64,000 bases of DNA, taken from positions 62,001 through 126,000 of IMG/VR virus record IMGVR_UViG_3300037264_008423, one strand, 5' to 3'. This document shows, piece by piece, positions 10,236 through 64,000 of the stretch. Position numbers and translations under genes: made by a program. The notes beneath the pieces were generated by a model. That model had not been told where the DNA came from and made no database searches. It saw nothing but the letters and a program-made list of their open reading frames with translations. How positions within the stretch are numbered: position 1 is the stretch's first letter; each line of letters begins with the position of its first letter.

Positions 10236-13200
10236 GTGCAGTTGGAGAATTTAGACGATGACGTGAGCGTGAAGGATCTGGCGGACTATCCGCGCTACCT
10301 GATCCGCAACCCTCAAGGCGACTACTGGTCCAATGACTGGGGATGGGTGGACTACGCCAGCGCCGACATTTTCAGTCACCTGGAAAAAGAGCGGTTCGAC
10401 CTGCCTTCGGAGGGTCAATGGGTTCCCCTGGCCGAATCCCGTCCGGTTATTGGTTTCCCCGGCAATGACTTGAAGGCGCTCCTGGGAGAGGATTTTGTAA
10501 ACAAAGCGGACGCCTTCCTTCAGGAGCAGGGTATGCTGTGCCTCCTGGAGTGGCACCCGCAGGGCCGTCGGGTGGGCCAGGCCCAGGCGGCGGGTCAGGC
10601 GCTCACGGCGCGCTTGAGCCTGAACAGCGCCGACAGCCAGCTCTTGCGCCGCGAGGGGAGCCTGAAGCTTTTAGATCAGTTGCGGGAGAGCGTGCGCGGG
10701 TTTCTGCCCAAGAGCGCCGAGAGCCGGGTCCGGGTGGTTCCCCAGCGTCCCCAGTATGACCGCTGGAACGACCGCTGGAACCTGGAGCTGGTGGTCTTGG
10801 AGGCGTCCGAGGACGACTTGGAGTCCAAAGAGGTCTATTTTGACGATGATCCACCTGAATTTGCCGCTCCCCAGGGCCTTAGCCCGGAGGGAGAGCGCGC
10901 CCGGCAGATCATTGTCCAGGTGCTTCGGCGCAATGGCGATCTGGATTCACGCGGTCAAAAGCATGTTTTCTATACCCCCGAACAATGGGCGCTAAAGGCG
11001 GATGAGCATGTTAAGGACGGGGTATTAGTGGTCGTTCACGATGGCGGCAGCCACGCTCCTTACTTTCACATGTCCTACGCGGCTGAATTAATGCTGAGCC
11101 GGATGGACCTGGCCCTGCGCCGGGAGGGATTTCAAATTTACCCCTACGCCCCTCATTACTCGGTGATTGCTCCGGTGGAACATGACGAGGCTAACCAGTG
11201 GTTTGTGCGCCAGATCGAGGATTGGTTCCAGCGAAACCCGGACCCGGCTGCGGTGCCCGGCGAGGAGCCGCCGCCCCCGGCAGCCACAGGGAATGTCCCG
11301 GAGAGCTTGGAGGACGATGACGATGTAAACTGGAAGGACCTGCAACTGCCGCTGGACAAAGAGGCGGCGATCCGGCACGTGTTTCGGCAGGCGGGGCTGA
11401 AGATCACGTCGATTCAGGAAGTGCCTGAAGACCAGGACTGGGGTGAGCTGGGGCACGCCCAGCGCATCATCGTCACCCGTGTTCCGCCCAATCCCGATCA
11501 GCCCTGGACTACGGACATAAACGCGTGGGAGGCAGTCGATGAGTTTTGTTTACGAATCAAGTCGGCCCTCTATGAGATCCTGGACACGGATGACATCGAG
11601 TGGCTGAGAAACTGGGGCCTGGAGGACCAAGCGCCGGAGGGCCGCCATTGGTATATCTGGTGGTATATCGGCGACCCGGACATCAAGGAAGAGCGGGAAA
11701 TGAATGAATCGGACGAGGACGACTTCGACGTGAAGGACTACTCGGACGACATCCCGCAATCGGATGACTTCCAGGCTTACCTGCTTCAGCGCGGATTTCG
11801 CAAGCTTTCGGGTCAGATGGGAGACTACTTCAAGAAGCTGCCTGCTGCTTACGCGCGGGTTCGGGTTTATCAGTATCCCAACTATGTCAGCTACCTGCTG
11901 GGCCTGAAGGAGGGCAACCACTGGTTTAAGTTGAGCGAGATGACCAACGCCTACCGGGTCCTGTCGGTTTTGCAGCAGCGAGGGCTGTTCGACGTGCGGG
12001 AGGGCCTGGACGAGGAGTTTGGAGCCGATGACGACCCGGAGCTGTATCTCACGCCCACGCCGAACCTTCAGGAGCGGTGGAATCAGTTCGAGGCGGCCTG
12101 GCGCAGTCAGTGGGCGCTCATACAGCGCGGGGTTAATTTCGGCCAGCGCACCGCTTACCTGGAGGGGATCATGCCCTCGCACCTGCGATGGCGCGCCGCG
12201 TTCCAAGAGGTTCAACGGCTCGTTTACGAGCACTTGGGGGGCGGACGCATCGCCGATTTCAAGTATCACCGGGATGGCTACGTCCTGTTTCACATCTACG
12301 ACCTGGGCGGCGTGGTGGAGAGCGAGGCGGAGAGTGAGGCGGATGATGTGGACTGGAAGGAGATCTCTTCCTATCCCAAGCCCAGCGCGCGGGAGGTCCG
12401 GGAAGCCATGAAGCGCCGGGGGATCGTCTATAATCGCCTGGTGCGCGGCAAGGATGTGGTGACCTTCCTGGGCTGGTTTAAGCGGGGTCAACTCGAACTG
12501 GATGTGCTGGCCCTGTTGCGGGAAGCGGCGGCGGAAGCGGGTCTTGACCAGGAGCACGTCCAGTTTTTCTATATGCCCGGCGCGGGTGAGGTCGCGATCA
12601 TCGCGGCGCGGACGGGCCTGTTGGAAAGCGAGGAGGATGAGGACTTTGACACTAGAACCTTGAAGGATGTGTCTGAAACTGGCAAGTTAGTGCCGGAAAT
12701 TGTGGCGGCGATGATCAAAAATGGGGTCATCCATATGATGGTTCGCAGGCCGTGGCAGCCCCCGCCCCACGACTTGCTGCTTTTTATGGGCTTGTGGCAG
12801 GCAGGCAAGACGGACCAGGAGGCCGCCCAGGTTTGCGCGGCGATCCTAAGAGATTTGCGCATTCCCATTACTTCCAGCTTGGACGACTGGTTCAACTATA
12901 TGCCCGGCTCCGGCGATTTCGACCTGGCGCTGCCTGCTTACCTGGTCTTGGACTGGGAGAGGTATGTGGTGGAATCCCAGGCTGGCCTGGTCCAAAAGAT
13001 CATCGAGGCCCAAGGCACGGTTCTAAACGTGCAAGTGGCAGACCGAGAGGAACTTGTCACGATTCAAGGCGAATGGAAGCCCGGAGCCACGGTTCAAGCT
13101 CTTGCCGAGGCCATTAGCGTGGATGCCAATCGGATTCAGTATGACGCCAAAAATGGCGAATTTACGGTGCTGGCAACCCGGCAAGCCCTTGTGCAAGAGG

Positions 13201-14765
13201 ATCAGGCGGATGGCAAGGCCAGCGACACCAAACGGGTCGCCATTGTGGCGGTGTTTCGGCAGAAGCAGGACGATCCCGCCTACGAGTGCCTGGTCTGCAA
13301 GCGCGAGGGGCCGCCAGCGGAGGGCGAATGGGTGATCCCAGGTGGTCATGCCGAGGAGGGCGAGGAGATCAAAGTCGCCGCGCGGCGTGAGTTGCAGGAA
13401 GAGGCGCACGTGGACCTGGGCGACCTGACCTTTGTTAAGACCATGCCCAATGAGACGGGGGACTTGGAAGTCCATGTCTTTGGAGCGATCTTGCCGGAAG
13501 GGGAGAGGGCCAAGGCCGGGGATGACGCGGAAAAGGTGAAATGGCTGCCCCTGGACGATCTGCCCAAGCTGAGCCTGGATAATGACAATTTGATCCGGGA
13601 AGTGGCCGAGGCGATGGAACTGCAACGGCTGCCCTCGGTGGACGAGAGCCTGCCCCCGCGCCTGGCCGACCAGATTCGGTCAAAGATAGCGGCCCTGAAG
13701 CCGCGCCGCGCGAGCCGCGCCGGTATGAGCTTCGAGGTTCAACAGCCAGAGGGATTTGTGGATCGGCTCATCGAGGGGATTGAGCGGGAAGCGGAGCAGT
13801 TGCAAGCCGACGCTCAGCCCGAACTGCGTCTCATGGACCTGATCGAGGATGCCTACAGCCAGACGGGCACCTATTTGTTTCCAGACGACCAGCAGGACGT
13901 GGAGCGATTGGCGCGCGTGCTGGTTCCTTTATTCAAAAAACCAGCCGGACGGCGGATCAAGGAGAGCGCGGACGCTCCCCCGCGCTATGGCACCGTTACC
14001 GACGAGGTAGTGCCTGCCCTGGAACAAGCTCTGGTGGAGATCTTTGGCCAGCGTTATGACTGGCTGGTGCCCCACGTGATCCAGCACATGGACCCGGAGA
14101 TCTCTTTGATCGCGATGGAGGGTGATCGCGTGATCGGTTTCTACATCCTGGGCCGCCGTTCGATCTTGGACGGCGTTAAGAGCGAGCACCTGAAGCCCAC
14201 TGAGGATTTGAAGCCCTATCGGCAGCGCCAGGGCATTGAGGGGGTAGCCCTGGGCATTGTGCCGGATCGCCGGGGCACGGGCCTGGGCAGCCGGTTCAAA
14301 GACTATCCACAAACCCTGGGCGCGGATTATATGTGGGGTCTGCAAATGCATGATCTGGATAACCTGAGCCACTGGCTCAAGCGCCGCCGCATTGTGGCGC
14401 GCAACCCGGAGATGGTCGCGACCCTCCAGGACTTTAAACCGGGGGCGGTAGCGGAGGCCAGCGAAGAGGATTTCGAGGCCAAGGACTTGGAAGATGATTT
14501 GCTGAATGACGAGCATTTTCAAAAGTTTGCCCAGGAGCACGGCCTACTCTACCACCCTGGCGCTAAAATGGTGCGCGACGTGCTGGATAATGTTTATGGT
14601 TCCATTTGGTTTAAGACCGGCCCCTATTTAAATCGGGAGGCCACGGTCCGCCAGTGGACCCAGGTGTTTTCCGACTATTTCAAGATCGATCCCGCCCGGA
14701 TGAAAGTGGCCTATTACCCGCCCAGTGGCGACATTATGGTCATGGTCACGAATCTGGTTCTGTAG
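10236..14765 (+). CDS. Modular polyprotein-like protein with 7 acidic tag linkers; cargo includes Nudix and GNAT domains
   Basis: Likely start GTG 10236 (TATTTA-N4-GTG). Nudix box GGHAEEGEEIKVAARRELQEEAHV at about 13341. GNAT motif A VALGIVPDRRGTGLG at about 14245. Recurring E(S/A)-acidic-KD tags. Confidence 0.75.
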   Translation: MQLENLDDDVSVKDLADYPRYLIRNPQGDYWSNDWGWVDYASADIFSHLEKERFDLPSEGQWVPLAESRPVIGFPGNDLKALLGEDFVNKADAFLQEQGMLCLLEWHPQGRRVGQAQAAGQALTARLSLNSADSQLLRREGSLKLLDQLRESVRGFLPKSAESRVRVVPQRPQYDRWNDRWNLELVVLEASEDDLESKEVYFDDDPPEFAAPQGLSPEGERARQIIVQVLRRNGDLDSRGQKHVFYTPEQWALKADEHVKDGVLVVVHDGGSHAPYFHMSYAAELMLSRMDLALRREGFQIYPYAPHYSVIAPVEHDEANQWFVRQIEDWFQRNPDPAAVPGEEPPPPAATGNVPESLEDDDDVNWKDLQLPLDKEAAIRHVFRQAGLKITSIQEVPEDQDWGELGHAQRIIVTRVPPNPDQPWTTDINAWEAVDEFCLRIKSALYEILDTDDIEWLRNWGLEDQAPEGRHWYIWWYIGDPDIKEEREMNESDEDDFDVKDYSDDIPQSDDFQAYLLQRGFRKLSGQMGDYFKKLPAAYARVRVYQYPNYVSYLLGLKEGNHWFKLSEMTNAYRVLSVLQQRGLFDVREGLDEEFGADDDPELYLTPTPNLQERWNQFEAAWRSQWALIQRGVNFGQRTAYLEGIMPSHLRWRAAFQEVQRLVYEHLGGGRIADFKYHRDGYVLFHIYDLGGVVESEAESEADDVDWKEISSYPKPSAREVREAMKRRGIVYNRLVRGKDVVTFLGWFKRGQLELDVLALLREAAAEAGLDQEHVQFFYMPGAGEVAIIAARTGLLESEEDEDFDTRTLKDVSETGKLVPEIVAAMIKNGVIHMMVRRPWQPPPHDLLLFMGLWQAGKTDQEAAQVCAAILRDLRIPITSSLDDWFNYMPGSGDFDLALPAYLVLDWERYVVESQAGLVQKIIEAQGTVLNVQVADREELVTIQGEWKPGATVQALAEAISVDANRIQYDAKNGEFTVLATRQALVQEDQADGKASDTKRVAIVAVFRQKQDDPAYECLVCKREGPPAEGEWVIPGGHAEEGEEIKVAARRELQEEAHVDLGDLTFVKTMPNETGDLEVHVFGAILPEGERAKAGDDAEKVKWLPLDDLPKLSLDNDNLIREVAEAMELQRLPSVDESLPPRLADQIRSKIAALKPRRASRAGMSFEVQQPEGFVDRLIEGIEREAEQLQADAQPELRLMDLIEDAYSQTGTYLFPDDQQDVERLARVLVPLFKKPAGRRIKESADAPPRYGTVTDEVVPALEQALVEIFGQRYDWLVPHVIQHMDPEISLIAMEGDRVIGFYILGRRSILDGVKSEHLKPTEDLKPYRQRQGIEGVALGIVPDRRGTGLGSRFKDYPQTLGADYMWGLQMHDLDNLSHWLKRRRIVARNPEMVATLQDFKPGAVAEASEEDFEAKDLEDDLLNDEHFQKFAQEHGLLYHPGAKMVRDVLDNVYGSIWFKTGPYLNREATVRQWTQVFSDYFKIDPARMKVAYYPPSGDIMVMVTNLVL

Positions 14766-14770
14766 CCCGT

Positions 14771-15234: not shown

Positions 15235-15293
15235 TAAAAAAAGTTTACTTTTTTGATTGCACTCTTTTCAGTCTTCGCTTAATCTCTTTTAAG

Positions 15294-17655: not shown

Positions 17656-17657
17656 AA

Positions 17658-18405: not shown

Positions 18406-18430
18406 CACGTGGACAGTTCAGAGCAAAAAG

Positions 18431-18453: not shown

Positions 18454-18476
18454 TGTTAAAAATAGTTCTACCGGAC

Positions 18477-23010: not shown

Positions 23011-23013
23011 GGC

Positions 23014-47115: not shown

Positions 47116-47122
47116 GGTATTT

Positions 47123-49828: not shown

Positions 49829-50254
49829 TCAACCAAAATTCAGCACTTTCACGACGCCGGTCAGGACCACGCTGACATCCACGTTGGAGGTATTGTTGCT
49901 CACCAGGAAGTAGTAGATACCCGGCGTGGCAAACTCGCGGACCGCGTAGCGGCCCAGGCTAACGACTCCGGGCGAGGAGCTGGAAACCAGGCAGGGCGAG
50001 GAGCACATCATGGGGGTCGTGTAGATTCCGGCGCTGATCACGCCCAGGGCCGTGCTGAAAATTTGCGGCGTGGCGGAAGCGGTTAAGATGCTCACCAAGT
50101 GCAGGTCCAGCAGGCGCACGCGCATGGCCTGGCCCAGGGTGAGCTGGATCTGGCCGCAGTTGAGATAGCGTCCCCGCCGCAGCTCGGTCTGCGGGAGCTG
50201 GAGCGGCACGTCGAAGTTGGTGCTGAACCGGGTGGGGGTTAAATAACCGTTCAT
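49829..50254 (-). CDS. Putative structural protein (paralogue of 53820-54302)
   Basis: YLT...D.P..LP.TE...G pattern shared with 53820-54302. Confidence 0.55.
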   Translation of the reverse strand: MNGYLTPTRFSTNFDVPLQLPQTELRRGRYLNCGQIQLTLGQAMRVRLLDLHLVSILTASATPQIFSTALGVISAGIYTTPMMCSSPCLVSSSSPGVVSLGRYAVREFATPGIYYFLVSNNTSNVDVSVVLTGVVKVLNFG

Positions 50255-53200
50255 AGCTGCTGATCAAGGTATTGGTAAGCGTATTTCAAGAGACGGGGCC
50301 AGGCTTCACGGGGAATGTGAAGCGCGGCGGCTCCTTTTGATCTGAGATAATTCAAAATTCGATCCCGATCCCAACCTTTGCGAAAACAAATTTGAACCAG
50401 CATGTGGGCGTGAGCCATAGCCTCTTTAGGGTCCTGGTAGTAATCTTTGCCAGGCATTGTTCCTGGAGCCGGTGGTTTATACCCCGGAGTAAGGGCCACG
50501 GGTGATCGGCGCGCCTGTTCTTTGTGGGTCAGCTCGTGGCTGAGAATTTGGGCGGCCCACTGTCTTAATTCTTCAGGCTTATTCACCATTGTGTCTGGAA
50601 TGAGAAGCAAAACTTTATCCAATTTAGGAGCATAGCCGCCTTTGAGCGTGCTGAAGAAACCGCCCAGTCTCAAAAGCGTTCCCTTTGGACTGTGTTTTTT
50701 TAGCTGTTTATCCAAATCAGACCACCAGAGTTGCGCGTCCATACTGTCAAAATCGGGCATGGACCGCAGGGAACTTTGGACCGATTTTACGATTTTGTCG
50801 GCCAGGACGTTGACTTGTTCGGCGGAGGGTCCTACGGCTCCTTCTGTAATCCGGGCGGCGGTTTGGCGCATTTCGCGCATCCAGTCCCACACGGTGTGCC
50901 ACTGCCGGGGATCGTAGTAGCCCGTTTTTTTAAACTGGCGGATCTGCGCCTGGGCGAGCAGGCGCAGATCATTGTTTTTGGTGCGCTTGGGGAAAGTGTG
51001 GCCGCCCACGCAGGGTCCGGGGATGCGGTATTGCACTTCCGAGGCTTGATCTTCCGGGTCTTCGGACACAAAGTAATTCAGCGATTTGCAGGTCGGCCAC
51101 TCCTCGATCTTGAACAGCCAGTGCTGCGCGGAGGTGGTTTGGGCCAGATCTTTGACCTCAAAATCGTCTTCGTCCACCGCGCCGCCCCAAGTGCCCCACG
51201 TGTGCGGTTGGAGCACCTGGTCCGACCGCTTAGGCAGCAAAATGCGCCGGGTGTCCCGCGCCGCGATGATACAGCCTGCGGCTTGTTCGCCCCAAAAACC
51301 CGTGGTGCGCAGCGCGTCCCCGTGGCTCAGCGCCTCCTGCACATTGTTTTTGTAAACAATGTCACCCGGTTGATCGACGGGTCCCTGGGCCTCGGTCCAG
51401 TCCTTGATGAGCTGGGTCGGCGGCTTGCCGTAATGGACGATCATCTGGCTGCGATACTCCTGGGTGCTGGAGCGGCCAATTTCAATAATGCACAGGATTT
51501 TGTTGCTGCCGCTAAAGCCCACGGGTGAAAGCAGCCTGCCGTTGACATTGAGCGACCAGTGTCCCACCTTCGAGGGCCGGGCGGTGTCCTTGAGCGCGCG
51601 GCTGAGCTGGTCGCTGAAGGCTAGCAGCTTGGCCTCGGCGACTGCCGGGTCGGGTTTCGGCGGCGCGTCCTCGTAAGTGCCGAAGCCGTGGGACCACTCC
51701 CGCCTGTAGCTGCTCATGTCCCAGTCACCGGTGTAGGACACCATGCGCTCCAGCATGAGGGGAAAGCCTTTCTGAAAGAGCAGGTCTTTGACACGTTGTT
51801 CCAGGGCGGGATGCGTGGCTGTGTCTTTGAATTTGTAGAGCAGTTGTTTAGCCGCCGCGTCCACCCACTCTCGTTTTTGCTTAGCCGCCCCTTCCCGGTA
51901 GTGGTCATAATCGGGGCCGAGCCGGTCGCCGTAGAACTCCATGAAGTAGGGCCAGATATGCGAGTAAACGTGATCGCTCAGGTGCGAGGCCAGCGCCAGG
52001 ATGCCATATTTAACCGAGTCCTCGTCAGCGACCAGCGAGCGGGGTTGCAGGGACATGACCACCACCGCTTGGTTTACTTTGTCCCGTTGGGCCACGCGCA
52101 GGGCCGCGCCCGTGGCGGTGGACAGGCTGGTGGTCACGTAGATGCCTTCCAAGCTCTTACGCGTGGGTTGGACCAGGCCACTATGGGGATCGTCCTGCCA
52201 CGACCGCTGTTTGGGGTCGGGCACCAGGCCCTCGGAGAGAATCTTGGGAACGAGCTGGGCGGACGTGCCGTGGTAAAAAATGGCGCGTTCCCGGCTGGCC
52301 CCCGTGCGGCGTTCGACAAGCCGGGATTCGTTGACATCCTCTTCGGCCCAGGGATTGTCCTCAACGGGCCTGGGCTTGAAATTGTAAACAGGTTTGACGT
52401 AGTAGGGGTCCAGGGCACCATTGCCGTTCCTTCTCGGATCGGAATAAACGGGCACTATTTCCAAGGTGCTGTAGGACTGGGCGGTGCTTAGGCGCTTATA
52501 GACTTTGGCGTCGCCGATGTAGCGGCGGAAATTGCCGCAAGAGTTGCCGGTATCGGACCATCGGGTATGAAACCAGGGGAAGGTGCTGTTGGGCACTTTG
52601 CTCTTGAGGACGTAGCCCACCGGGCTAACCGGGCCAAAGGCCAGGTCTTTGGTGTCAACATCCTCATCCTCTGATTCTCCGAGCTGTTCGCGATTTTGTT
52701 CAGGAAACTCCAGCGGGTCGGGAAAGTGGAAGTATTTGGCAAAGTCAATTGACGTGGCGGTGAAGGAGGCTCCGTCGCCCTGGCTCCAGAAACCAGTCCA
52801 ATTGATTTCCACCCCGTAAAAACCCTTCTGGTCGAGCAGCCACTTCCACTCCGCGACCACCGGCTCCGACCAGTAATTGTCGTCCGCACCCGCTTCTCTC
52901 CACCAATTTCGAGCGCGTTCCTTGGCGTCGTCGTCCAGTTGCTCATAGGTGATGCCTGTGCCATCTTCTCGGCGGCCTTCAGCATTGAACTCGTAGCCAT
53001 TGGCTTCGATGTTTTCTGCTACTTGTTCATCCGAGTTGTGATCGTCGTAGGCAGCTTCCAGCTCCCGATACATTTCGTGGTTCCAGCCCACCATGCGCTC
53101 GTTAATGTCCGCCTCCAGGTTCCTGATATCCCCGATCAGGCGCTCGTCTTCCGCGTCGCATTGCTCGTCGGGCATGTCATCCGGCCAGTCGAAACTGCCT

Positions 53201-53823
53201 TCCAGGTCGCAGGTGGTGCTGCGCTCATGGACGTAGCGATGGCTCACCCGCGTCACTCTGCCGGAGAGTGACAGAACGCCCCAGTCAACCAACTGGGCCA
53301 ACTCGGTAAAGCCGTCCTCATCATAGAAAACGTCTTTGGCGTCGAAATCGTCCTCGTCCGCTTCCAGCAGGTTGGCCGCGCCGCCGTGTGCTGACTCCAC
53401 GTAGGAAAGATCCCGGCTAAGGTCGCTCAGCCAGGGTATGGTTTGGGTGCTGCAAAAGCGGTTGGGACTTTTGATGGGATGGCGCTCCATCGCGCTGATG
53501 ACGATTTTAAGCCACTCGTCCCAATTGTATCCCGGCTTTAGTGTAACCATGTTGGTTGCGCCTGACCAACCAGGTTTCCAGCGCCACTTTCCATTCTTAG
53601 CTGGATGAAGCTGGGGAGAGCGGTAGTAAAGGCTGACAATGCGCGAGCCATCGGGGTAGTCGTGCCAGTTCAGCTTATAGCCCTCGTATTCGATCTCCGT
53701 GCCATACTTTGCGCCCTTGGGGTGAGGGCGCGGGTCAGGGACGGCGGTGTAAACCACGTCCTTCCAATCCGGGTCTTCCTCCGTCTCCAGAAGCAATCGA
53801 AGAATGGTGTCGGCGGTTTTCAC
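50251..53823 (-). CDS. Modular polyprotein-like protein: 4 acidic tags, ART-like domain, truncated Nudix, HExxH zincin-like domain
   Basis: IFYHGTS..LV.KIL.EGL at about 52280; FWG..AAGCII.A.DT.RILL..RS...WGTWGGAVD; HELTH at about 50530. Confidence 0.75.
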   Translation of the reverse strand: MKTADTILRLLLETEEDPDWKDVVYTAVPDPRPHPKGAKYGTEIEYEGYKLNWHDYPDGSRIVSLYYRSPQLHPAKNGKWRWKPGWSGATNMVTLKPGYNWDEWLKIVISAMERHPIKSPNRFCSTQTIPWLSDLSRDLSYVESAHGGAANLLEADEDDFDAKDVFYDEDGFTELAQLVDWGVLSLSGRVTRVSHRYVHERSTTCDLEGSFDWPDDMPDEQCDAEDERLIGDIRNLEADINERMVGWNHEMYRELEAAYDDHNSDEQVAENIEANGYEFNAEGRREDGTGITYEQLDDDAKERARNWWREAGADDNYWSEPVVAEWKWLLDQKGFYGVEINWTGFWSQGDGASFTATSIDFAKYFHFPDPLEFPEQNREQLGESEDEDVDTKDLAFGPVSPVGYVLKSKVPNSTFPWFHTRWSDTGNSCGNFRRYIGDAKVYKRLSTAQSYSTLEIVPVYSDPRRNGNGALDPYYVKPVYNFKPRPVEDNPWAEEDVNESRLVERRTGASRERAIFYHGTSAQLVPKILSEGLVPDPKQRSWQDDPHSGLVQPTRKSLEGIYVTTSLSTATGAALRVAQRDKVNQAVVVMSLQPRSLVADEDSVKYGILALASHLSDHVYSHIWPYFMEFYGDRLGPDYDHYREGAAKQKREWVDAAAKQLLYKFKDTATHPALEQRVKDLLFQKGFPLMLERMVSYTGDWDMSSYRREWSHGFGTYEDAPPKPDPAVAEAKLLAFSDQLSRALKDTARPSKVGHWSLNVNGRLLSPVGFSGSNKILCIIEIGRSSTQEYRSQMIVHYGKPPTQLIKDWTEAQGPVDQPGDIVYKNNVQEALSHGDALRTTGFWGEQAAGCIIAARDTRRILLPKRSDQVLQPHTWGTWGGAVDEDDFEVKDLAQTTSAQHWLFKIEEWPTCKSLNYFVSEDPEDQASEVQYRIPGPCVGGHTFPKRTKNNDLRLLAQAQIRQFKKTGYYDPRQWHTVWDWMREMRQTAARITEGAVGPSAEQVNVLADKIVKSVQSSLRSMPDFDSMDAQLWWSDLDKQLKKHSPKGTLLRLGGFFSTLKGGYAPKLDKVLLLIPDTMVNKPEELRQWAAQILSHELTHKEQARRSPVALTPGYKPPAPGTMPGKDYYQDPKEAMAHAHMLVQICFRKGWDRDRILNYLRSKGAAALHIPREAWPRLLKYAYQYLDQQL

Positions 53824-54317: not shown

Positions 54318-55580
54318 TTAAGCGGCTCCTGGCTGAGGCGGGGCCATTAAGTGCCGATCTAAGTAGTATTCCCCCACCCGCTGCTCTGGACTGAGCAGGT
54401 GCCGGTTCTTCCTCCACCAGCCCAGGGCCGGTCCCGTGCCGTAAACATTTCCAGGACCATAGTCTCCACTAGGGTTAAAAGGCGTAGTTTGGCTGAGGAA
54501 GGACATTTCTTCGCGGACCCGGTGCGCGGCTTCCTCGTCACTTTCGGTCCAGAAATTACCCACTTTCTGACCATTGTAAACCACATCGTAATGGCCGCCA
54601 AAGGCGGGGATGACTTTCCACAGGTTGGGATCTTCCTCGATGCGCTTGCGAATCAGGATCTCGGCGGTCTGGCCGGTGCGGTGTCCCCGGTAGTGGCTCT
54701 GCCGCAGTTTAACAAAGGGGGCCAGGGCTTCAAAAGCGCGTTTAGCGCCGTTAATGTAAGCACTGGCGGTGGGGGTGGGCCAGGTGAAGCGGATAATCAT
54801 CTCGTCGCCCTCGCGGCGCGCTTCCTCCACTTTGAAACCGGCGTCTTCCAGCACCCAGCGCGCCTGCGCCACGGGATCGTAATTGTATTCTTTGGTGCTG
54901 AGTTCGTCGTCATCCAGCATTTCACCCAAGACCCGGCTGGCCTTGGTCATCATGTCGTGCGTTGCAAAAAGATCTCGCGCTCCCGTGTGATCCGCCATGA
55001 CGGCATGAACGGCGGCCTGGAGCGTGGGAAAGGCAATGTGCTGCTTCAGGCTGTGAATCCCCCGCTTGCGAGTGTATTGGACCACGAACTTGTCCGGGGC
55101 ATACTGGTGGATCACTCCCACGTTTTCGCCACAGGTCTGGTCCGGGAGCTGGGCATAAACATACGTGCGGTTAGGGGTCTTTCCCCGGCCTTTAACCGTG
55201 GCCGTTTCCCAGTGGATTACGGGAGCCGTATCCAGTTCCTTCAGGTCGCTATCATCCGCCTCTTCCTGAGCTTCCTGAAAGTAGTCATACCAGAGCCACA
55301 CGCTCTGATGCACCGGGTTAAAGGGGTGGACGATCTGTTTTTGGTTGAATTTGGCCAGCCAGTTTTTGGCGATTTTACGGGCTTTCTCTTCGCTCTCCAC
55401 GGTGCGCGTCATGCCGTAGTCCTTGCCGTCCAGCGTGAAAAATGCCGCCCAGCCCCGATCCACTTCGTCCCATTCCACACGGGCTTCCCACATACCGGCG
55501 ACGTTATCGCTGAGATCTTTTAGATCTTTTAGATCCAGGTCCGATACGTCGTCTTCCAAGATGGCGTCAAGGCTATACAT
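54318..55580 (-). CDS. Modular protein with 3 acidic tags
   Basis: Start ATG 55580; ILEDDVSDLDLKDL, EEADDSDLKEL, EMLDDDELSTKEY. Confidence 0.65.
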   Translation of the reverse strand: MYSLDAILEDDVSDLDLKDLKDLSDNVAGMWEARVEWDEVDRGWAAFFTLDGKDYGMTRTVESEEKARKIAKNWLAKFNQKQIVHPFNPVHQSVWLWYDYFQEAQEEADDSDLKELDTAPVIHWETATVKGRGKTPNRTYVYAQLPDQTCGENVGVIHQYAPDKFVVQYTRKRGIHSLKQHIAFPTLQAAVHAVMADHTGARDLFATHDMMTKASRVLGEMLDDDELSTKEYNYDPVAQARWVLEDAGFKVEEARREGDEMIIRFTWPTPTASAYINGAKRAFEALAPFVKLRQSHYRGHRTGQTAEILIRKRIEEDPNLWKVIPAFGGHYDVVYNGQKVGNFWTESDEEAAHRVREEMSFLSQTTPFNPSGDYGPGNVYGTGPALGWWRKNRHLLSPEQRVGEYYLDRHLMAPPQPGAA

Positions 55581-56353: not shown

Positions 56354-56842
56354 TCAGATATTTTCGCCGCTCTGGCTTGTGGCTCCCTCCGGGGGCGCGA
56401 CGAAAACGCCGACCTGCCTGTGGGTGATTCCGTGGCACGCGAACAGCGTGGCGGCGAGCAGGTTGTTTACGGCCATTGTTTGCTCTTTTCCTTCGGGCAC
56501 GATCTGAACGAGGACTTGGGCGACTTGTTGGCATAGGTTTTGAACGAGTCGGCACTTTTCGGTTTGGGACTGGTCCGGGGGCGGGTGAAAAGTGAACGTT
56601 TCATCGACCTCCATTAAGGCGGCACTGATATCAATGGGTTCGCGCACGACAGCTTCATCTTGTTTAGTCATGCCTTCCAGAACGGAATGCGCCGCTTCCC
56701 GCACACCGGTAATTTGGCGGGTGAGCAGGCAGTCTTTGCCGTTCGCAATGATCAGGTGGTAGGATTCACAGTCGCCTTGGCCGATTCGGGTAAAATAGGC
56801 CGAGACGGAGCCGAGTAATTTAACTTTTCCGAGCATTTTCAT
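56354..56842 (-). CDS. Hypothetical protein with a C-terminal Acb2/Tad1-like helical-hairpin domain
   Basis: FTFHPP...VPEGKEQTMAVNNLLAATLFA resembles the FTYHPP...SRE.SLA.T.LEEA.MWA family. Confidence 0.4.
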   Translation of the reverse strand: MKMLGKVKLLGSVSAYFTRIGQGDCESYHLIIANGKDCLLTRQITGVREAAHSVLEGMTKQDEAVVREPIDISAALMEVDETFTFHPPPDQSQTEKCRLVQNLCQQVAQVLVQIVPEGKEQTMAVNNLLAATLFACHGITHRQVGVFVAPPEGATSQSGENI

Positions 56843-58902
56843 ACTTTAAAGCTTTTAACCCGCGTGTAGCCGGGAGGCAATGGAATGTCCACCAGGGGCG
56901 CTTCCTGGACGAAGCCCTCCAGGTTGTGCGTGGTGTGGATGCGCGGGTTATTCGGTGAGAGCATGGTGACTTTTTCGTCGGAGTTGATGGCGTTATTATA
57001 GGACCCGGCGCAGGCATCCGTGGTGTCCTTGCTCCCGTTGGGCGGGTGGTCCACCTTTTTGTCGGTATCCAGGAGATTTTCCGCCTCGTGCATCAGGTGA
57101 CGGTGCCGGTAGGGGCGCAGGCGCAATTCTTCCGCCGCCATGCGCCAGTTGGTGTAGGCGTCTTTGTTCCGGTCGATGCTCTGCTTGTCCACTTTAAAGC
57201 CACGAGCTTCCAGCATTTGGAGCGACATTTCACTCTGAAACTGGTCAAAGGTAACCAGTCCGAAGTTGTAGCCGCACTTGGTATTGAGCCAGAGCAAAAA
57301 GTTTTGGATCTTTTCGAGCGAGATGGGCTTGACCTGACCGGCCACGATGGTCAGGATGAAGTCATACTCCACGATCAGCCGGTATTCGGAAAAAGGGATG
57401 CCTTTGCTGAGCAGGTTTTCAATGAGGGTTGCCCCCACCAGGTGACAGATCGATAGCCCGGCCATGTTTTGCGTGGCCAGGTCGATGTGGGCGTAGCGCA
57501 GCGAGTAGGGATGGCGCTTGGGAATAATTTGCGACTGGACCATCGTGCAAAACACCCGGTGATCCAGGTAATCCCACAGGTTCATGGAGTCCTCCATTGA
57601 AAGCGGCAGCATTTCCTGGCCGCCTTTGACCGGGCAGACCACGCCGTCGCGCTCGGCCAGCTCCACGCAGCGTTCAAAGTCCACCATCGTGGCAAACCAG
57701 CGGTTGACGCCGCCCGTGGAGATGCCGCACACGTCCCGCAGGGCGTTCAGGGGACGGCGCTTAAATTCCTGGAAATACATCTCCGGCACGAGTTCCGTGC
57801 GCGCCCCGGAAGCGGGGGTCTCGTGAATTTCGGTGCCGGTCTCCCGGCCATCCTCGTCATACCACCCCGACAGGATCATGGGCGGAATGTTTTTCAGGCC
57901 GTAGGCGACGCGGAACCAGCGTGGACCCAGTTGCAGCGTGTGCCGCTTAATTTTGTAAACACTATTGCGATAGACCCGCTGGGTGCCGGGGTCGTTGACC
58001 GCCTCGATTTCCTTGATGATGACTTCCGTAAACGAGGATTCGTCTTTAGCTGACGAGGCCAGGATGGAAATGGCAGGCAGGAATCCGGCGACTTTCCGAA
58101 AGCGGTTGTTAATACGGTTGCGAACTTCGTTGTAAAGCTCGTAGGCTTTCGTGTCCGGCTCGGCTTCTAAGCGCCAGTTTCCCTCGTCCAGCCCCACTCC
58201 GATCACATTGCGTCCGATCAAGTGCTGGCCTTTGGAACCAGCGGTGAGCCAGATGGCGTTTTTGAGCGGAATGCGAAAGTTGGTATAGCTGTTGTCCGGG
58301 CTATACTGGCACTCCTCCGTAAAATAAGGCGAATTGGCCATGAAGTTCATGGCGTCTCCAAAAGCGGTTTCAATGACCGCCGCTTTGGTCACCGACAGAA
58401 GATTGAAGATGATTTTGGTGCCTTTGGTCAGGCCAAAGAAGTTGTGCGGGTTGCGCAGCAGCGTGGCGATTAAGACCCGGTAGAGCAAGATCGTCACCAT
58501 GACGAAGGTTTTGCCGATTCCCAGGGAGCCGGTGATGACGCAGTTGTGGATGGCGCTGTCGTAGTTGAAGTCCCGGCACAGGATCTCTTTCCAGGAGGGG
58601 AAGAGGCCCTCCGAGTCTTGACTCTTGACCATGAGCGCGCCCAGGTAGTAGGGGTCCTCCAGGAAATCCTGCATGGAAGGGGGCTTTTCCGCGTAGTCGG
58701 CCACGTTAAGCTGTTGGAGCAACTCCGAGTCCCCGGACTGCCGGAACTGGCTGAGCATGTCCTCCCATACCTGTCGGCCATAGGGGGACAGGGACTTTAG
58801 CATGGCGTCGATATTTTCGCTCTGCAATCCCTGGGTGAGCACGTCTTCAACCTGCTCTGTCAGAGTCTTTTTGTTTACGTTAGCGTTGTCTATCACCGGC
58901 AT
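56839..58902 (-). CDS. terL: Terminase large subunit
   Basis: Walker A ITGSLGIGKT, Walker B VGLDE, nuclease AHIDLA, VTFDQFQS, C-terminal VDHPPNGSKDTTDA. 687 aa from ATG 58902. Confidence 0.9.
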   Translation of the reverse strand: MPVIDNANVNKKTLTEQVEDVLTQGLQSENIDAMLKSLSPYGRQVWEDMLSQFRQSGDSELLQQLNVADYAEKPPSMQDFLEDPYYLGALMVKSQDSEGLFPSWKEILCRDFNYDSAIHNCVITGSLGIGKTFVMVTILLYRVLIATLLRNPHNFFGLTKGTKIIFNLLSVTKAAVIETAFGDAMNFMANSPYFTEECQYSPDNSYTNFRIPLKNAIWLTAGSKGQHLIGRNVIGVGLDEGNWRLEAEPDTKAYELYNEVRNRINNRFRKVAGFLPAISILASSAKDESSFTEVIIKEIEAVNDPGTQRVYRNSVYKIKRHTLQLGPRWFRVAYGLKNIPPMILSGWYDEDGRETGTEIHETPASGARTELVPEMYFQEFKRRPLNALRDVCGISTGGVNRWFATMVDFERCVELAERDGVVCPVKGGQEMLPLSMEDSMNLWDYLDHRVFCTMVQSQIIPKRHPYSLRYAHIDLATQNMAGLSICHLVGATLIENLLSKGIPFSEYRLIVEYDFILTIVAGQVKPISLEKIQNFLLWLNTKCGYNFGLVTFDQFQSEMSLQMLEARGFKVDKQSIDRNKDAYTNWRMAAEELRLRPYRHRHLMHEAENLLDTDKKVDHPPNGSKDTTDACAGSYNNAINSDEKVTMLSPNNPRIHTTHNLEGFVQEAPLVDIPLPPGYTRVKSFKV

Positions 58903-58923
58903 ATGTAGCTTAAGAACAGAGCT

Positions 58924-59307
58924 ATGAAAGCGACTTTGGCTATTCTTAAGCACCTTTTAGAGGACGACGAAGAAGATTTTGACCTGAAAGACCTGGCGGA
59001 CACCCCGCCGTGCCCTGTGTTTGCGCTCGTCGATGGACTTACCGGCTTTGCTGACCCCATCGGCAGCGCCATTTACCGCAATTGGAAGATTTATTACGAC
59101 AGCCGTCCCAATGATGCTTACGAAATCGACTGGATTCGCTACAACCACACCCCCAATAAGACCTACAGTCGGCGGAGCCAGCGCCGGTTTGAGCAGGCGG
59201 TCCTGGACCGGGGCGGGGGAGGCCGCCTTGAAATCAAAGTGCTGGACGGCACCCTGGGGCCGCACCGGTGGAGTGTGCGCGTGCAGAGTTCCGGTTCTTG
59301 CGCGTGA
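58924..59307 (+). CDS. Small protein with an N-terminal acidic tag
   Basis: ILKHLLEDDEEDFDLKDL. Confidence 0.65.
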   Translation: MKATLAILKHLLEDDEEDFDLKDLADTPPCPVFALVDGLTGFADPIGSAIYRNWKIYYDSRPNDAYEIDWIRYNHTPNKTYSRRSQRRFEQAVLDRGGGGRLEIKVLDGTLGPHRWSVRVQSSGSCA

Positions 59308-61680: not shown

Positions 61681-61858
61681 CCTTGGCTGGCTGAGTCGCT
61701 GGCTTACCGGATTCAGTCACAGGGCGTTTTTGGTTGACCTGATCCGCTTCTTTTTGAGCGTCTTCTAGCTTTTCGTGAAGCTGACCGGATACGCGCTTGC
61801 CGTCCTGGACTACTACGTTTTTTCCGTCGTCCTTATGCATATTAATCATGAACCGCAT
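61658..61858 (-). CDS. Small hypothetical protein
   Basis: 66 aa ending KNLLG. Confidence 0.55.
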   Translation of the reverse strand: MRFMINMHKDDGKNVVVQDGKRVSGQLHEKLEDAQKEADQVNQKRPVTESGKPATQPAKVVKNLLG

Positions 61859-61865
61859 TACCGCT

Positions 61866-62900
61866 TTAGAACAAATACTGTAGAACAGAAGCGGGTAGCT
61901 CGCTTGAAACTTTATTTTGTTTACTTAACTCATTCCACCGTCGCAGATAAGTGTCCTTCGCGGGTGAAGGCTCCTTAGTGTAAATGGACAAAAGATGGCG
62001 CGCCGCTTCATATTGCGTTCGGTGCCGCGCCAGTGACTTATTCGAGGAGCTGCGCGCAATCCACGGAAATTCCGCGTGCAGTTGGCGCAGGACTTCAACT
62101 CGCGGGGCGTTTTCGGGCGCTTCCCGCCGGATGTCACCCAAGAAATGGCCGTCCGTCGTGCCCACCAGGTAGTAGCCTACCCAGTCGGGATCGGGCTGGT
62201 AAAGAACGAAAGGGTCGTCCATGTCTTTGGGTTCAAAGTCCTCCTCCGCCTCGCGGAGGCCAGCGCGGGTGCGCGGGTCCCAGGAAACCTTGGAATAGCG
62301 ACCGGCTTGGGACTGGTTGAGCAGCTTGCGCAGCTTTTCGTGCTTGGCCTTAAGCCGGTCCACCTGTTTATAGTCCGGCAAACCTACCGCTGTGCCGGTA
62401 TCCGCAGTCGAGGGGGCCGGGGCGGAAGGTTCGCCATTGGTGCCGTCCGAAAAGTCGGAAGTGCTGTTACTGAGATACTCGGTGACCCGGCGCTTGCGCC
62501 GTTTATTGCCGTGGTAAGTCCAGCCGGGAAACTGGCGGTGAAACGCGATTCGGCGGTCCATTTCCTCCCGGTCCTCAGCCCTTCTGCGTCGCAGGTAAGC
62601 TTTGCGGCGGACTTCCTGCGCCCAGTAGGTCAAGGGTCTGCCCACCCGCACTCGTCCCCAGCGATCTTTGTAGATGGGCATGCTATCCGCTTCCCACCGG
62701 TTTTTCTCCGCCCCCTGCTTGCCGAAAATTCCAGAATAGCTTTGACGGTCGTGGTGTTCAAGGGTGTCAAAGATCCAGGCGCGCGCTTCTGACTCGGACG
62801 CGAAGTTTCGGCTACGGGCGTAGCGCGACCACCACTTCACCGTGTCCTCCGGGAGAATCGAATCCGGGTAAATTTCTTTAAAATCGTCTAGTTCGTCCAT
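61866..62900 (-). CDS. Modular protein with acidic tags
   Basis: MDELDDFKEI and GLREAEEDFEPKDM. Confidence 0.65.
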   Translation of the reverse strand: MDELDDFKEIYPDSILPEDTVKWWSRYARSRNFASESEARAWIFDTLEHHDRQSYSGIFGKQGAEKNRWEADSMPIYKDRWGRVRVGRPLTYWAQEVRRKAYLRRRRAEDREEMDRRIAFHRQFPGWTYHGNKRRKRRVTEYLSNSTSDFSDGTNGEPSAPAPSTADTGTAVGLPDYKQVDRLKAKHEKLRKLLNQSQAGRYSKVSWDPRTRAGLREAEEDFEPKDMDDPFVLYQPDPDWVGYYLVGTTDGHFLGDIRREAPENAPRVEVLRQLHAEFPWIARSSSNKSLARHRTQYEAARHLLSIYTKEPSPAKDTYLRRWNELSKQNKVSSELPASVLQYLF

Positions 62901-63607: not shown

Positions 63608-63706
63608 AGGATAAATCGGCGAGCGCGGAATTAAGCCTATTCCAAGTTAGTAGCGGCATGCCCTTTTCTGCTTCAACGGGGCCGCGCTCGCCTAAATGTT
63701 TACAGT

Positions 63707-64000
63707 TTATTGCCATGTTCCTGGGTTTGTCAACACCATGCGATCAATGTAGGCCGTGACTGTGGCTGCGTCCGCGTCGATGGCATACTGCTCCAGGTAG
63801 GCTTGCATCCGGGACTCGGCCAGCCCTTGCTGGCGTAGCGTCCACCAGTTTTTGACCCAATCAAAGCGGCCTAGCTCGTTTTCGATGAAGTCATAGGCGA
63901 TGTCTTGCAGATCTTCCGGGTCGTCATCCTCCAGCAGGACTTCCACCAGGGATTGCGCCGCCTCCCGTATTGTCCGCGCCTCGGCGGCGCGGCGCATACG
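63707..64000 (-). CDS. Hypothetical protein with an LLE-acidic motif; may start beyond the window
   Basis: EVLLEDDDPEDLQDI; frame open to the window edge. Confidence 0.55.
   Translation of the reverse strand, partial: RMRRAAEARTIREAAQSLVEVLLEDDDPEDLQDIAYDFIENELGRFDWVKNWWTLRQQGLAESRMQAYLEQYAIDADAATVTAYIDRMVLTNPGTWQ

What the first reader, a model, noticed from the sequence alone, without database searches (positions are those of the whole stretch)
10236..64000. Tagged polyprotein system: about 25 copies of an xxE-(S/A)-acidic-FD/ExKDL linker in seven ORFs
Seen: 7 tags in 10236-14765, 7 in 25573-29010, 4 in 50251-53823, 3 in 54318-55580, and further copies in 58924-59307, 61866-62900 and 63707-64000. 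Examples are LLESEEDEDFDTRTLKDV, LPESVEDDFETKDL, LLEADEDDFDAKDV and HLLEDDEEDFDLKDL. Tags sit at N-termini and exactly at boundaries between 60-250-aa domains. Known: T4 gp21-type prohead proteases cut head-internal proteins after Glu in (I/L)xE contexts, including the injected ADP-ribosyltransferase Alt. Inference: these ORFs are cargo cassettes packaged into the prohead and cut at E into many small proteins, each starting with an acidic KDL tag that may act as a packaging or ejection signal. This would be an extensible delivery system for injected effectors.
Basis: partly seen in the sequence, partly recalled or inferred. Interest (0 to 1): 0.88.

Follow-up and report, generated by a model that had tools for sequence, protein, structure and literature searches.

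The report
Shared junction tag on phage multi-effector proteins
A large uncultivated phage and a few relatives place the same short acidic peptide at the start of, and between, otherwise unrelated protein modules; it most likely marks where these proteins are cut and labels the pieces as cargo delivered with the DNA, but neither step has been shown.

Summary
The window is part of a 238-kb metagenomic myovirus contig. It holds 24-25 copies of h-x-E-(S/A)-(D/E)n-D-F-(D/E)-x-K-(D/E)-(L/V) in seven ORFs, against 0 in shuffles. The rest of the contig adds about 12 copies on 8 more proteins.

A tag profile run against 1.84 billion proteins found only this phage and about ten multi-tag proteins from relatives. 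Those proteins carry the same modules in different orders, always with a tag at each junction.

Synonymous codons in the tags vary freely, so selection acts on the peptide. In an AlphaFold model of ORF C, all four tags lie in low-confidence linkers.

The modules include Nudix and 2H phosphoesterase, InPase in a relative, weak PARP-like ART hits, and an HExxH motif. This is the repertoire of Aravind's "polyvalent proteins". The tagged genes flank the terminase and tail-fibre genes, and the phage has a T4-type portal.

No cleavage or virion data exist. I could not identify the protease or the capsid gene in the 89% of the contig I read.

Verdict: a real, apparently undescribed junction/address motif, and a new variant of a known kind.

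The parts
10236..14765 (+). ORF A. Tagged multi-module protein of 1509 aa with 7 tags and a Nudix domain at about aa 1029-1149 of the longer GTG ORF.
   Evidence: Gene call; Pfam NUDIX 1.4e-17; tags.
10242..10280 (+). Tag A1, N-terminal: MQLENLDDDVSVKDL.
10797..10835 (+). Tag A2: LEASEDDLESKEV.
11304..11342 (+). Tag A3: PESLEDDDDVNWKDL.
11703..11741 (+). Tag A4: NESDEDDFDVKDY.
12327..12365 (+). Tag A5: AESEADDVDWKEI.
12618..12671 (+). Tag A6, with a 3-residue insertion: LLESEEDEDFDTRTLKDV.
14451..14489 (+). Tag A7: AEASEEDFEAKDL.
25573..29010 (+). ORF B. Tagged multi-module protein of 1145 aa with 7 tags and an HExxHxxQ peptidase-like module at aa 157-372.
   Evidence: weak LPD1 hit, E 0.08.
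25600..25638 (+). Tag B1, after the N-terminal leader MTRAEQAIRSLVE.
26002..26040 (+). Tag B2: SESEEEDFDTKDL.
26686..26724 (+). Tag B3: PESVEDDFETKDL. It starts directly after the end of the HExxH module.
26977..27015 (+). Tag B4: LESVEDDFEIKDL.
27490..27528 (+). Tag B5: QESEEDDFETKDL.
27847..27885 (+). Tag B6: ESEDDDDVDMKAL.
28417..28455 (+). Tag B7: LEDEEDDFEVKDL.
50251..53823 (-). ORF C. Tagged multi-module protein of 1190 aa with 4 tags. Modules in order: N1; M2 (phrog_5162); M3 (PARP-like, weak evidence) followed by a Nudix remnant; HExxH module.
53755..53793 (-). Tag C1, after the leader MKTADTILRLLLE. The leader is a helix at residues 2-12 in the model.
53329..53367 (-). Tag C2: LEADEDDFDAKDV.
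52642..52680 (-). Tag C3: GESEDEDVDTKDL.
51145..51183 (-). Tag C4: GAVDEDDFEVKDL. It is joined to a truncated Nudix domain, as a deletion scar.
54318..55580 (-). ORF D. Tagged protein of 420 aa with 3 tags.
   Evidence: Gene call; tags.
55521..55559 (-). Tag D1, after the leader MYSLDAILE.
55233..55271 (-). Tag D2: AQEEADDSDLKEL.
54885..54923 (-). Tag D3: EMLDDDELSTKEY. Degenerate.
58924..59307 (+). ORF E. Single-module protein of 127 aa with leader plus tag, transcribed divergently from the terminase gene.
58957..58995 (+). Tag E1: LEDDEEDFDLKDL, after the leader MKATLAILKHL.
61866..62900 (-). ORF F. Protein of 344 aa with one internal tag and a partial N-terminal copy, MDELDDFKEIY (62868-62900).
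62220..62258 (-). Tag F1: LREAEEDFEPKDM.
63707..64000 (-). ORF G. Protein of 151 aa that runs off the window end to about 64162. It has a degenerate tag, LLEDDDPEDLQDIAYDF, at about 63887-63946 with no Lys.
56839..58902 (-). Context: terminase large subunit, 687 aa. D and C lie downstream of it, and E is divergent from it.
   Evidence: tblastn: 29.8% identity over 91% coverage to annotated TerL genes, E 9e-44. The same gene order is seen in relatives L019 and L023.
46444..49813 (-). Context: tail-fibre-like genes (223 aa and 896 aa) immediately downstream of ORF C.
   Evidence: phrog_11445 and phrog_31; weak CBM_5_12.
23644..24867 (+). Context: tail-fibre-like gene upstream of ORF B.
   Evidence: phrog_4176, 1.6e-13.

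Best explanation
The tag is a peptide-level junction and address element of phage 'polyvalent' multi-effector proteins. Its full form is a short amphipathic helix or the C-terminal end of the preceding module, then hydrophobic-x-Glu-(Ser/Ala), then 3-6 acidic residues, then D-F-(D/E)-x-K-(D/E)-(L/V). It lies in a flexible linker.

Proposed mechanism (inferred):
- The tagged proteins are made late and loaded into the prohead.
- A Glu-specific maturation protease of the T4 gp21 / phiKZ gp175 kind cuts at h-x-E|(S/A).
- N-terminal leaders are removed and multi-module proteins fall into single modules.
- Each product keeps an N-terminal acidic DFxxKDL label. That label is a docking signal for retention or ejection. 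Its partner is unknown.
- The modules are delivered with the DNA and act early against host defences or metabolism. They include Nudix, 2H phosphoesterase, a possible PARP-like ADP-ribosyltransferase and an HExxH peptidase-like module.

Shown: the motif, its position at module boundaries, its conservation under module shuffling, selection on the peptide, the effector-like domain repertoire, and the late or structural gene context.

Inferred: cleavage, the site of cleavage, the protease, packaging and ejection.
For: - Motif excess: 16 strict hits against 0 in shuffles. About 36 copies on 15 proteins of the contig, all between 55 and 155 kb. No other copy reached the HMM score cut-off in the 85 kb read outside that stretch.
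- The tag profile against 1.84e9 proteins recovers only this phage and about ten multi-tag proteins of relatives.
- The same modules occur first, internal or last in different proteins, with a tag at each junction. A syntenic ortholog of C has 1586 aa and 8-9 tags.
- At positions with identical amino acids, tags share the same codon 53% of the time, against a background of 51-55%, so selection is on the peptide.
- In the AlphaFold model of C, the tags lie in the low-pLDDT linkers and the leader is a helix.
- [LIVMF]xE lies upstream of 92% of tags and E[SA] upstream of 69%, far above background.
- Leaderless natural N-termini (MALGDFETKDL, MSAIIQEEEDFDLKDV, MQLENLDDDVSVKDL) resemble the predicted cleavage products.
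- Domains: NUDIX, 2_5_RNA_ligase2, InPase at 2e-48 and weak ART-PolyVal in relative P0004, and weak PARP hits.
- Context: TerL is adjacent, tail-fibre genes are nearby, and there is a T4-type portal, a sheath, a tube and a baseplate.
- Precedents: the T4 CTS and Alt, cut at ITE-6 and LTE-619; SPN3US gp53/54, with N-terminus MANFVKSKLARESVE (PMC5694885); AXE sites (PMC10052503); P1 Dar proteins (PMC12810830); the polyvalent-protein model (PMC5512222).
Against: - There are no proteomic or biochemical data of any kind.
- The prohead protease and the major capsid protein were not recognised in contig positions 403-212,718, which is 89% of the contig. So neither the protease type nor shared sites in the capsid protein could be checked.
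- The conserved part is longer than a normal protease site, and its best-conserved half (DFxxKDL) lies downstream of the proposed cut.
- None of the recognised structural proteins carries the tag.
- B and C contain an HExxH module that could do the processing instead.
- The model of C predicts no docking of the tag onto anything.
- The model of B was useless, with a mean pLDDT of 29.
Confidence: 0.45

Rival explanations
1. The tags are processing sites, but processing is not a head-maturation event. The multi-module proteins would be cut in the cytoplasm, before packaging or after injection, by a dedicated peptidase. The candidate is the HExxHxxQ zincin-like module embedded in ORFs B and C acting in cis or trans, as Iyer et al. 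proposed for polyvalent proteins.
For: HExxHxxQ modules are present at B aa 266 and C aa 1096. There is a weak LPD1 hit on the motif. Iyer et al. predict release of domains by embedded MPTase domains (PMC5512222). The tags lie in accessible linkers.
Against: No HExxH module occurs in any of the tagged proteins of relatives that I hold, nor in the other 13 tagged proteins of this phage. Those tags are equally conserved. The zincin assignment rests on a motif and a sub-threshold hit. The module is poorly modelled.
Confidence: 0.2
2. There is no cleavage. The tag would be a flexible acidic linker carrying a short linear motif, DF(D/E)xKD(L/V), that binds one common partner. That partner could be a scaffold, a portal, a capsid inner surface or a host hub protein. 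Multi-tag proteins would then bind multivalently and function, or be packaged, intact, as N4 vRNAP and P1 DarB are.
For: The best-conserved residues are D-F-D/E-x-K-D/E-L/V, not the Glu junction. Copies are disordered. Known large packaged proteins can stay uncut (PMC5512222). Leaderless N-terminal copies keep only the core.
Against: The h-x-E-(S/A) element is strongly enriched and travels with the upstream module. After module M2 it reads REQ(L/M/I)xE(S/A) in seven relatives. Multi-module and single-module tagged proteins appear interchangeable, which is easier to explain if they end up as equivalent pieces.
Confidence: 0.2
3. The tag is mainly an evolutionary joint. It would be a tolerated acidic linker that persists because recombination between tags shuffles cassettes, with no biochemical role of its own.
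For: Module order differs between relatives at every tag. ORF C shows a deletion running from the Nudix box into a tag, GGAV|DEDDFEVKDL.
Against: Codons in tags are no more alike than background, so there is little DNA identity to recombine on. The motif is kept at N-termini, where no joint is needed. Specific residues (F, K, D, L/V) are kept across roughly 50%-diverged relatives.
Confidence: 0.07
4. The effect is on translation. Runs of acidic residues destabilise bacterial ribosomes (intrinsic ribosome destabilisation). Tags would then cause graded premature termination and set the stoichiometry of N-terminal modules.
For: Consecutive acidic residues can stop translation in bacteria, especially near the N-terminus (PMC9718836, PMC12673854). 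Tags contain 4-9 acidic residues.
Against: This does not explain the conserved F, K and L/V or the h-x-E-(S/A) element. It cannot release downstream modules. Most runs are shorter than those reported to act.
Confidence: 0.03

Closest known systems
Polyvalent proteins of phages and conjugative elements (Iyer, Burroughs, Anand, de Souza, Aravind 2017; PMC5512222)
   Same: These are large proteins of 2-15 unrelated domains, encoded next to packaging and virion genes and predicted to be delivered with the DNA. The domain repertoire is shared: 2H, InPase, ART, Nudix-type enzymes, MPTase-like HExxH and unknown 'LPD' modules. Processing into units is predicted.
   Different: That paper describes no conserved junction peptide; a full-text search for 'linker' and 'boundaries' gave 0 hits. 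Here one tag marks every junction and also heads single-module proteins. Most modules have no Pfam or PHROG match.
T4 capsid targeting sequence and gp21 processing of internal proteins and Alt (Mullaney and Black 1996; PMC5694885)
   Same: There is a 10-20-residue N-terminal leader ending in (L/I)-x-Glu on diverse cargo proteins. The leader is portable. Alt is an injected ADP-ribosyltransferase cut at ITE-6 and LTE-619.
   Different: In T4 the signal is only N-terminal and is discarded. Here the conserved acidic DFxxKDL part lies after the putative cut and is repeated inside multi-module proteins. No gp21 homolog was found.
Ejection / inner-body proteins of phiKZ-like phages, cut by the S80 protease at (S/A/G)-X-E or A-X-E (PMC5694885, PMC10052503)
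   Same: Many head-internal proteins are processed after Glu, sometimes at several sites. The SPN3US gp53/54 N-terminus, MANFVKSKLARESVE, resembles leader plus E-S-x-E.
   Different: An (S/A/G)-x-E pattern is present next to only 39% of tags. No phiKZ-type hallmark genes turned up in the precomputed Pfam annotations and PHROG scans of the parts of the contig examined. The propeptides there are long and not of one shared motif.
Phage P1 Dar anti-restriction proteins (PMC12810830)
   Same: These are anti-defence proteins, including the roughly 2000-aa DarB, that are packaged in the head and co-ejected. The DarA N-terminus is cut by the prohead protease.
   Different: Dar proteins load by an ordered protein-protein hierarchy, not by a common short tag. 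There is no sequence relation.
Encapsulin cargo-loading peptides, and junction motifs of polymorphic toxins such as VENN in CdiA (comparison from my own knowledge, not tested here)
   Same: In both, one short conserved peptide is shared by unrelated cargo or toxin modules. It marks the exchangeable cassette and mediates loading or processing.
   Different: These are different systems with different sequences. The comparison is an analogy only.

Membership tests
Polyvalent proteins (Iyer et al. 2017) | Several unrelated domains in one polypeptide. | tested here: met
   In C, four tag-bounded segments contain five or six separately folded regions. 85 modules fall into 54 families across 21 proteins.
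Polyvalent proteins (Iyer et al. 2017) | Domains drawn from the characteristic conflict repertoire (MPTase, ART, 2H, InPase, LPDs and others). | tested here: met
   2_5_RNA_ligase2 (the 2H family) at 1.7e-10 in the tagged 790-aa protein. InPase at 2.2e-48 in relative P0004. NUDIX at 1.4e-17 in A. ART-PolyVal, PARP and LPD1 hits are all below threshold.
Polyvalent proteins (Iyer et al. 2017) | Encoded by a phage with portal-terminase packaging, among late or virion genes. | tested here: met
   TerL is adjacent, tail-fibre genes are nearby, and Portal_T4 is present.
Polyvalent proteins (Iyer et al. 2017) | Delivered into the cell with the DNA. | not testable with these tools
   This needs virion and infection proteomics.
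T4-type CTS / gp21 substrates | N-terminal 10-20-residue leader ending in (L/I)-x-Glu. | tested here: met
   About 20 leaders follow M-x(2-4)-x-x-I-(L/I/V)-x-x-(L/V)-(L/I)-E. [LIVMF]xE lies upstream of 92% of tags.
T4-type CTS / gp21 substrates | A gp21 / S77-S80 family prohead protease in the genome. | tested here: inconclusive
   No Pfam or PHROG hit in contig positions 403-212,718. The last 26 kb were not read, and divergent proteases would be missed. The portal itself is only 20-25% identical to its nearest known relative.
T4-type CTS / gp21 substrates | Cleavage after the Glu and presence in the head. | not testable with these tools
   There is no isolate and no proteome.
phiKZ-like ejection proteins (S80 protease substrates) | (S/A/G)-X-E sites, and phiKZ-type core genes. 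| tested here: inconclusive
   [SAG]xE lies next to 39% of tags, against 12% background. No phiKZ-type hallmark genes turned up in the precomputed Pfam annotations and PHROG scans. This is an absence of hits; I ran no dedicated search for them.
Self-processing polyprotein with an embedded zincin peptidase | A peptidase domain present wherever the cleavage sites are. | tested here: not met
   HExxH is present only in B and C. It is absent from the other tagged proteins and from the relatives' proteins that I hold.

The most novel reading that the evidence does not exclude
The tag is a portable, self-sufficient 'cut here and load/eject me' label. Any protein module given leader plus tag, or inserted between two tags, would be processed and delivered by the virion. 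If so, this phage lineage runs an open-ended, plug-and-play effector delivery system. The single-module and multi-module tagged proteins would be interchangeable formats of it.
Probability: 0.3. Interest if true: 0.85.

Novelty: new variant of a known kind. Interest (0 to 1): 0.68.

Why it matters
Polyvalent proteins and packaged anti-defence proteins are known, but how their domains are separated and addressed is still conjecture. Here the junctions are written in one recognisable peptide that is conserved across a lineage.

That turns the conjecture into simple experiments: a tagged reporter, a candidate protease, and N-terminomics. It also gives a sequence handle for listing a phage's delivered cargo from the genome alone. 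In this case that cargo is about 15 proteins and more than 50 module families, most of unknown function, which makes them candidates for new counter-defence activities.

If the tag is portable, it could also serve for loading foreign proteins into phage heads, as the T4 CTS has been used.

Tried and rejected
- A DNA- or RNA-level element (recombination site, RNA structure) is rejected. Synonymous codons in tags agree no more than background.
- Chance or low-complexity sequence is rejected. There were 0 hits in shuffles and 0 in 1.5 Mb of control loci. The exact DNA pattern is multi-copy only in this contig among 2.9 million IMG/VR contigs; single matches elsewhere look like chance.
- P0014 and P0016 from the profile search are unrelated repeat proteins.
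- Similarity of ORF B to known phages or to any protein of similar length: none.
- PDB sequence searches gave only the Nudix domain.
- A Foldseek search with the whole ORF C model gave nothing significant.
- The AlphaFold model of ORF B, built from only 3 sequences, had a mean pLDDT of 29 and is unusable.
- A supposed fission of C's first module in relative L023 is not supported. Only the leader and tag match.
- The hunt for the capsid protein and the prohead protease used all 12 context look-ups, 7 of 8 viral scans and all 12 family scans, without success. Candidates of 364, 473, 351 and 265 aa gave no capsid or protease hit. The 265-aa protein belongs to a tRNA/Ro60 region.
Full report
**Origin of the window.** The window is positions 62,001-126,000 of IMGVR_UViG_3300037264_008423, which is the same as JGI Ga0393283_0000006. 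This is a 238,436-bp metagenomic contig of about 58% G+C. ORF B has no relative in 50,697 GenBank phage records by DNA or protein search, and no relative of similar length among 5.8 billion proteins. The contig encodes a terminase large subunit inside the window at 56839-58902(-), with 29.8% identity over 91% coverage to annotated TerL genes, E 9e-44. It also encodes a T4-type portal (PF07230), a gp25-like protein, a baseplate wedge and hub, and a tail sheath and tube. Replication genes are present as well: PolA, an NAD-dependent ligase and a DnaB carrying an intein. It is therefore a large contractile-tailed phage of a deep, uncultivated lineage. Its portal is only 20-25% identical to the nearest known portal.

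**Check of the observation.** A strict regex for the core, [DE][FVWL][DE].K[DE][LVIMY], hits 16 times in six frames. An HMM and a looser regex add degenerate copies. The counts are A 7, B 7, C 4, D 3, E 1, F 1 plus a partial N-terminal copy, and G 1 degenerate copy lacking the Lys. That makes 24-25 in the window.

**Anatomy of the tag.** I collected 100 unique copies from this phage and its relatives. The Lys was required by the search, so its invariance is by construction. With that caveat, the core is D (90%) - F (65%; otherwise V or L) - D/E (89%) - x - K - D/E (95%) - L/V/I (88%). It is preceded by 3-6 acidic residues. Upstream of those lies hydrophobic-x-Glu-(Ser/Ala):
- [LIVMF]xE is found within 12 residues upstream of 92% of tags. 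The figure is 20% for random windows and 46% before other acidic runs.
- E[SA] is found upstream of 69% of tags, against 13-25% background.

N-terminal copies usually start with a 9-13-residue leader of the form M-x(2-4)-x-x-I-(L/I/V)-x-x-(L/V)-(L/I)-E, which is modelled as a helix. A few proteins have the core directly at the N-terminus with no leader: MALGDFETKDL, MQLENLDDDVSVKDL and MSAIIQEEEDFDLKDV. At positions with identical amino acids, two tags use the same codon 53% of the time, against a background of 51-55%. Selection is therefore on the peptide and not on DNA or RNA.

**Position of the tags.** ORF C was modelled with AlphaFold2 from 12 sequences, giving a mean pLDDT of 61.5. All four tags lie in segments with pLDDT below 50 (residues 8-37, 138-169, 382-398, 827-898). 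Confident domains lie between them; for example, M2 at 170-381 has pLDDT of about 65-92, mostly above 80. The paralogous HExxH module ends with the same residues in B, where a tag follows, and in C, where the stop codon follows. The fourth tag of C is different. It is joined to the first half of a Nudix domain, cut exactly at the Nudix box: GGAV|DEDDFEVKDL in C, against GGAVEEGEAPASAAEREAREESGY in relative P0011. This is a deletion that ended in a tag.

**Distribution in the genome.** I read contig positions 403-212,718, which is 89% of the contig. Outside the window there are eight more tagged proteins:
- a 292-aa protein;
- a 790-aa protein with three tags and a 2H phosphoesterase domain (2_5_RNA_ligase2, 1.7e-10);
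- proteins of 203, 221, 327, 259 and 230 aa.

In total there are about 36 tags on 15 proteins. All lie between 55 and 155 kb. Outside that stretch no other copy reached the HMM score cut-off, including the tail, portal and replication regions. None of the recognised structural or replication proteins carries a tag.

**Distribution elsewhere.** The exact DNA pattern for EDDF(D/E)xKDL is multi-copy only in this contig among 2.9 million IMG/VR contigs. A 30-position profile of 25 tags, searched against 1.84 billion representative proteins, returned 17 proteins at E of 1e-3 or better. Five are from this phage, two are unrelated repeat proteins, and ten are foreign multi-tag proteins of 250-2050 aa with up to 12 tags. 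One lies on a contig syntenic with the window, in the order TerL, D-like, C-like, tail fibre. There the ortholog of C has 1586 aa and 8-9 tags. Three more related JGI contigs of 102-151 kb carry tagged proteins in the same place. As a control, the tag HMM finds nothing at 9 bits or more in 848 kb of bacterial loci that encode untagged homologs of module M2, nor in 668 kb of other viral loci.

**Module shuffling.** Cutting 21 family proteins at their tags gives 85 modules in 54 families, 17 of which have several members. The same module appears in different positions:
- M2 comes first, directly after leader plus tag, in P0006, P0009 and P0012. It comes second in C and P0011.
- Family F15 is first in P0007 and last in P0008.
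- The first three conserved modules of A are colinear with P0004. After that A carries Nudix, where P0004 carries InPase and a weak ART-PolyVal match.

The h-x-E-(S/A) element travels with the upstream module. After M2 it reads REQ(L/M/I)xE(S/A) in seven proteins, whatever module follows. In P0004, internal tags are preceded by leader-like helices. Single-module and multi-module tagged proteins therefore look like interchangeable formats.

**What the modules are.**
- Clear hits: NUDIX in A, a 2H phosphoesterase in the 790-aa protein, and InPase in relative P0004 at 2.2e-48.
- Weak hits: PARP-type ART in three homologs of C's M3, at the stretch aligned to 'FYHGTS'; ART-PolyVal; and LPD1 on the HExxHxxQ motif of B.
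- M2 (phrog_5162) has untagged homologs in many phages and in alphaproteobacterial genomes and plasmids.
- Most modules match nothing.

This is the repertoire and genomic context of the polyvalent proteins of Iyer et al. That paper lists 2H and InPase as phage-type domains. It predicts packaging in the head and release of the domains by peptidases, and it compares these proteins with RNA-virus polyproteins. It describes no junction motif (PMC5512222).

**Mechanism.** A Glu-specific maturation protease would cut at h-x-E|(S/A). This would remove N-terminal leaders and separate the modules. Each product would start with (S/A)-acidic-DFxxKD(L/V), which would act as a docking label.

The following points support it:
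- the enriched h-x-E-(S/A) element;
- the CTS-like leaders;
- the leaderless natural N-termini that look like cleavage products;
- the linker location of the tags;
- the terminase and tail-gene context;
- the T4-type portal;
- the precedents of T4 (a CTS of 10-20 residues; Alt cut at ITE-6 and LTE-619), of SPN3US and phiKZ (AXE and S/A/G-X-E sites; the gp53/54 N-terminus MANFVKSKLARESVE), and of the P1 Dar proteins (PMC5694885, PMC10052503, PMC12810830).

The following points count against it or remain open:
- no cleavage or virion data exist;
- I could not identify the prohead protease or the capsid protein despite an extensive walk along the contig;
- the conserved core lies downstream of the proposed cut and has no known partner;
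- B and C carry an HExxH module that could process the proteins instead, although that module is absent from the other tagged proteins and from the relatives I hold.

I put 0.45 on the full chain. The sub-claims score differently:
- about 0.95 that the tag is a functional peptide at module boundaries;
- about 0.8 that these are polyvalent proteins;
- about 0.6 that the tags are cut at all.

**Rivals.** Four alternatives remain: cytoplasmic or self-processing by the HExxH module (0.2); an uncut linker with a binding motif (0.2); a mere recombination joint (0.07); and ribosome destabilisation by acidic runs (0.03; PMC9718836). A DNA- or RNA-level element is rejected.

**Novelty and score.** The kind of system is known: polyvalent or packaged effector proteins, with T4-style targeting and processing. 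What seems undescribed is a single conserved junction/address peptide that marks every cassette boundary and also heads separate small proteins, across a phage lineage. I rate it a new variant of a known kind, with interest 0.68. It makes the long-standing conjecture of polyvalent-protein processing directly testable, and it lists a phage's putative cargo from sequence alone.

Noticed in passing
window 34618-35646 (-): A PurA/PurZ-like adenylosuccinate synthetase (phrog_1211, E 2.5e-48). It could belong to a 2-aminoadenine (Z-base) pathway or be an ordinary PurA.
   Followed up: no
window 51166-51330 (-), ORF C aa about 830-886: A remnant of the N-terminal half of a Nudix domain, cut at the Nudix box and fused to a tag. 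Relatives P0006 and P0011 have the complete Nudix followed by one to four more tag-delimited modules at this position.
   Followed up: yes
window 40437-41087 and 41084-41719 (-): Two tandem paralogous methyltransferase genes (phrog_21658, E 2.5e-29 and 3.7e-27).
   Followed up: no
L017 10001-15533 (contig about 129.3-134.8 kb, beyond the window end): A tandem array of seven paralogs of 225-244 aa plus a 441-aa member. All begin 'M(A/S)xI...(R/N)EEF(V/L)RP'. They have no tags and no family match.
   Followed up: partly
window 4596-5036 and 7103-7588 (+), and many places on the contig: The contig is unusually rich in homing-endonuclease-type genes (EndoVII, HNH-AP2, GIY-YIG) and has a DnaB helicase interrupted by an intein.
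   Followed up: no
window 1-4599 (+): The C-terminal 1527 aa of a 1982-aa protein whose only recognisable domain is calcineurin-like phosphoesterase. It is untagged and lies between tagged genes.
   Followed up: no
L027 15941-16372 (-), contig about 41.8-42.2 kb, just upstream of the portal gene: A 143-aa protein starts MTDKELAQVLIEELADDGIDKKI. This is a leader-like helix followed by a degenerate tag, next to the T4-type portal.
   Followed up: no
P0016 (foreign 671-aa protein from an A+T-rich source): An unrelated repeat protein. Most of its repeats, of variable length, begin 'NESE(E/D)DDFNIT(T/L)D'. This acidic-Phe start resembles the tag but lacks K-D-L.
   Followed up: no
L161 13377-15095 (contig about 205.4-207.1 kb): A TROVE/Ro60-like RNA-binding protein (phrog_850, 6e-80). 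A neighbouring 265-aa gene has homologs in the tRNA region of Rhizobium Kleczkowskaviridae phages. This hints at a distant affinity and perhaps an alphaproteobacterial host.
   Followed up: partly
window 52684-53328 (-), module M2 of ORF C: This module (phrog_5162, function unknown) has untagged stand-alone homologs in GAP32/RaK2-type jumbo phages, in many E. coli and Campylobacter phages, and in hundreds of alphaproteobacterial genomes and plasmids.
   Followed up: partly
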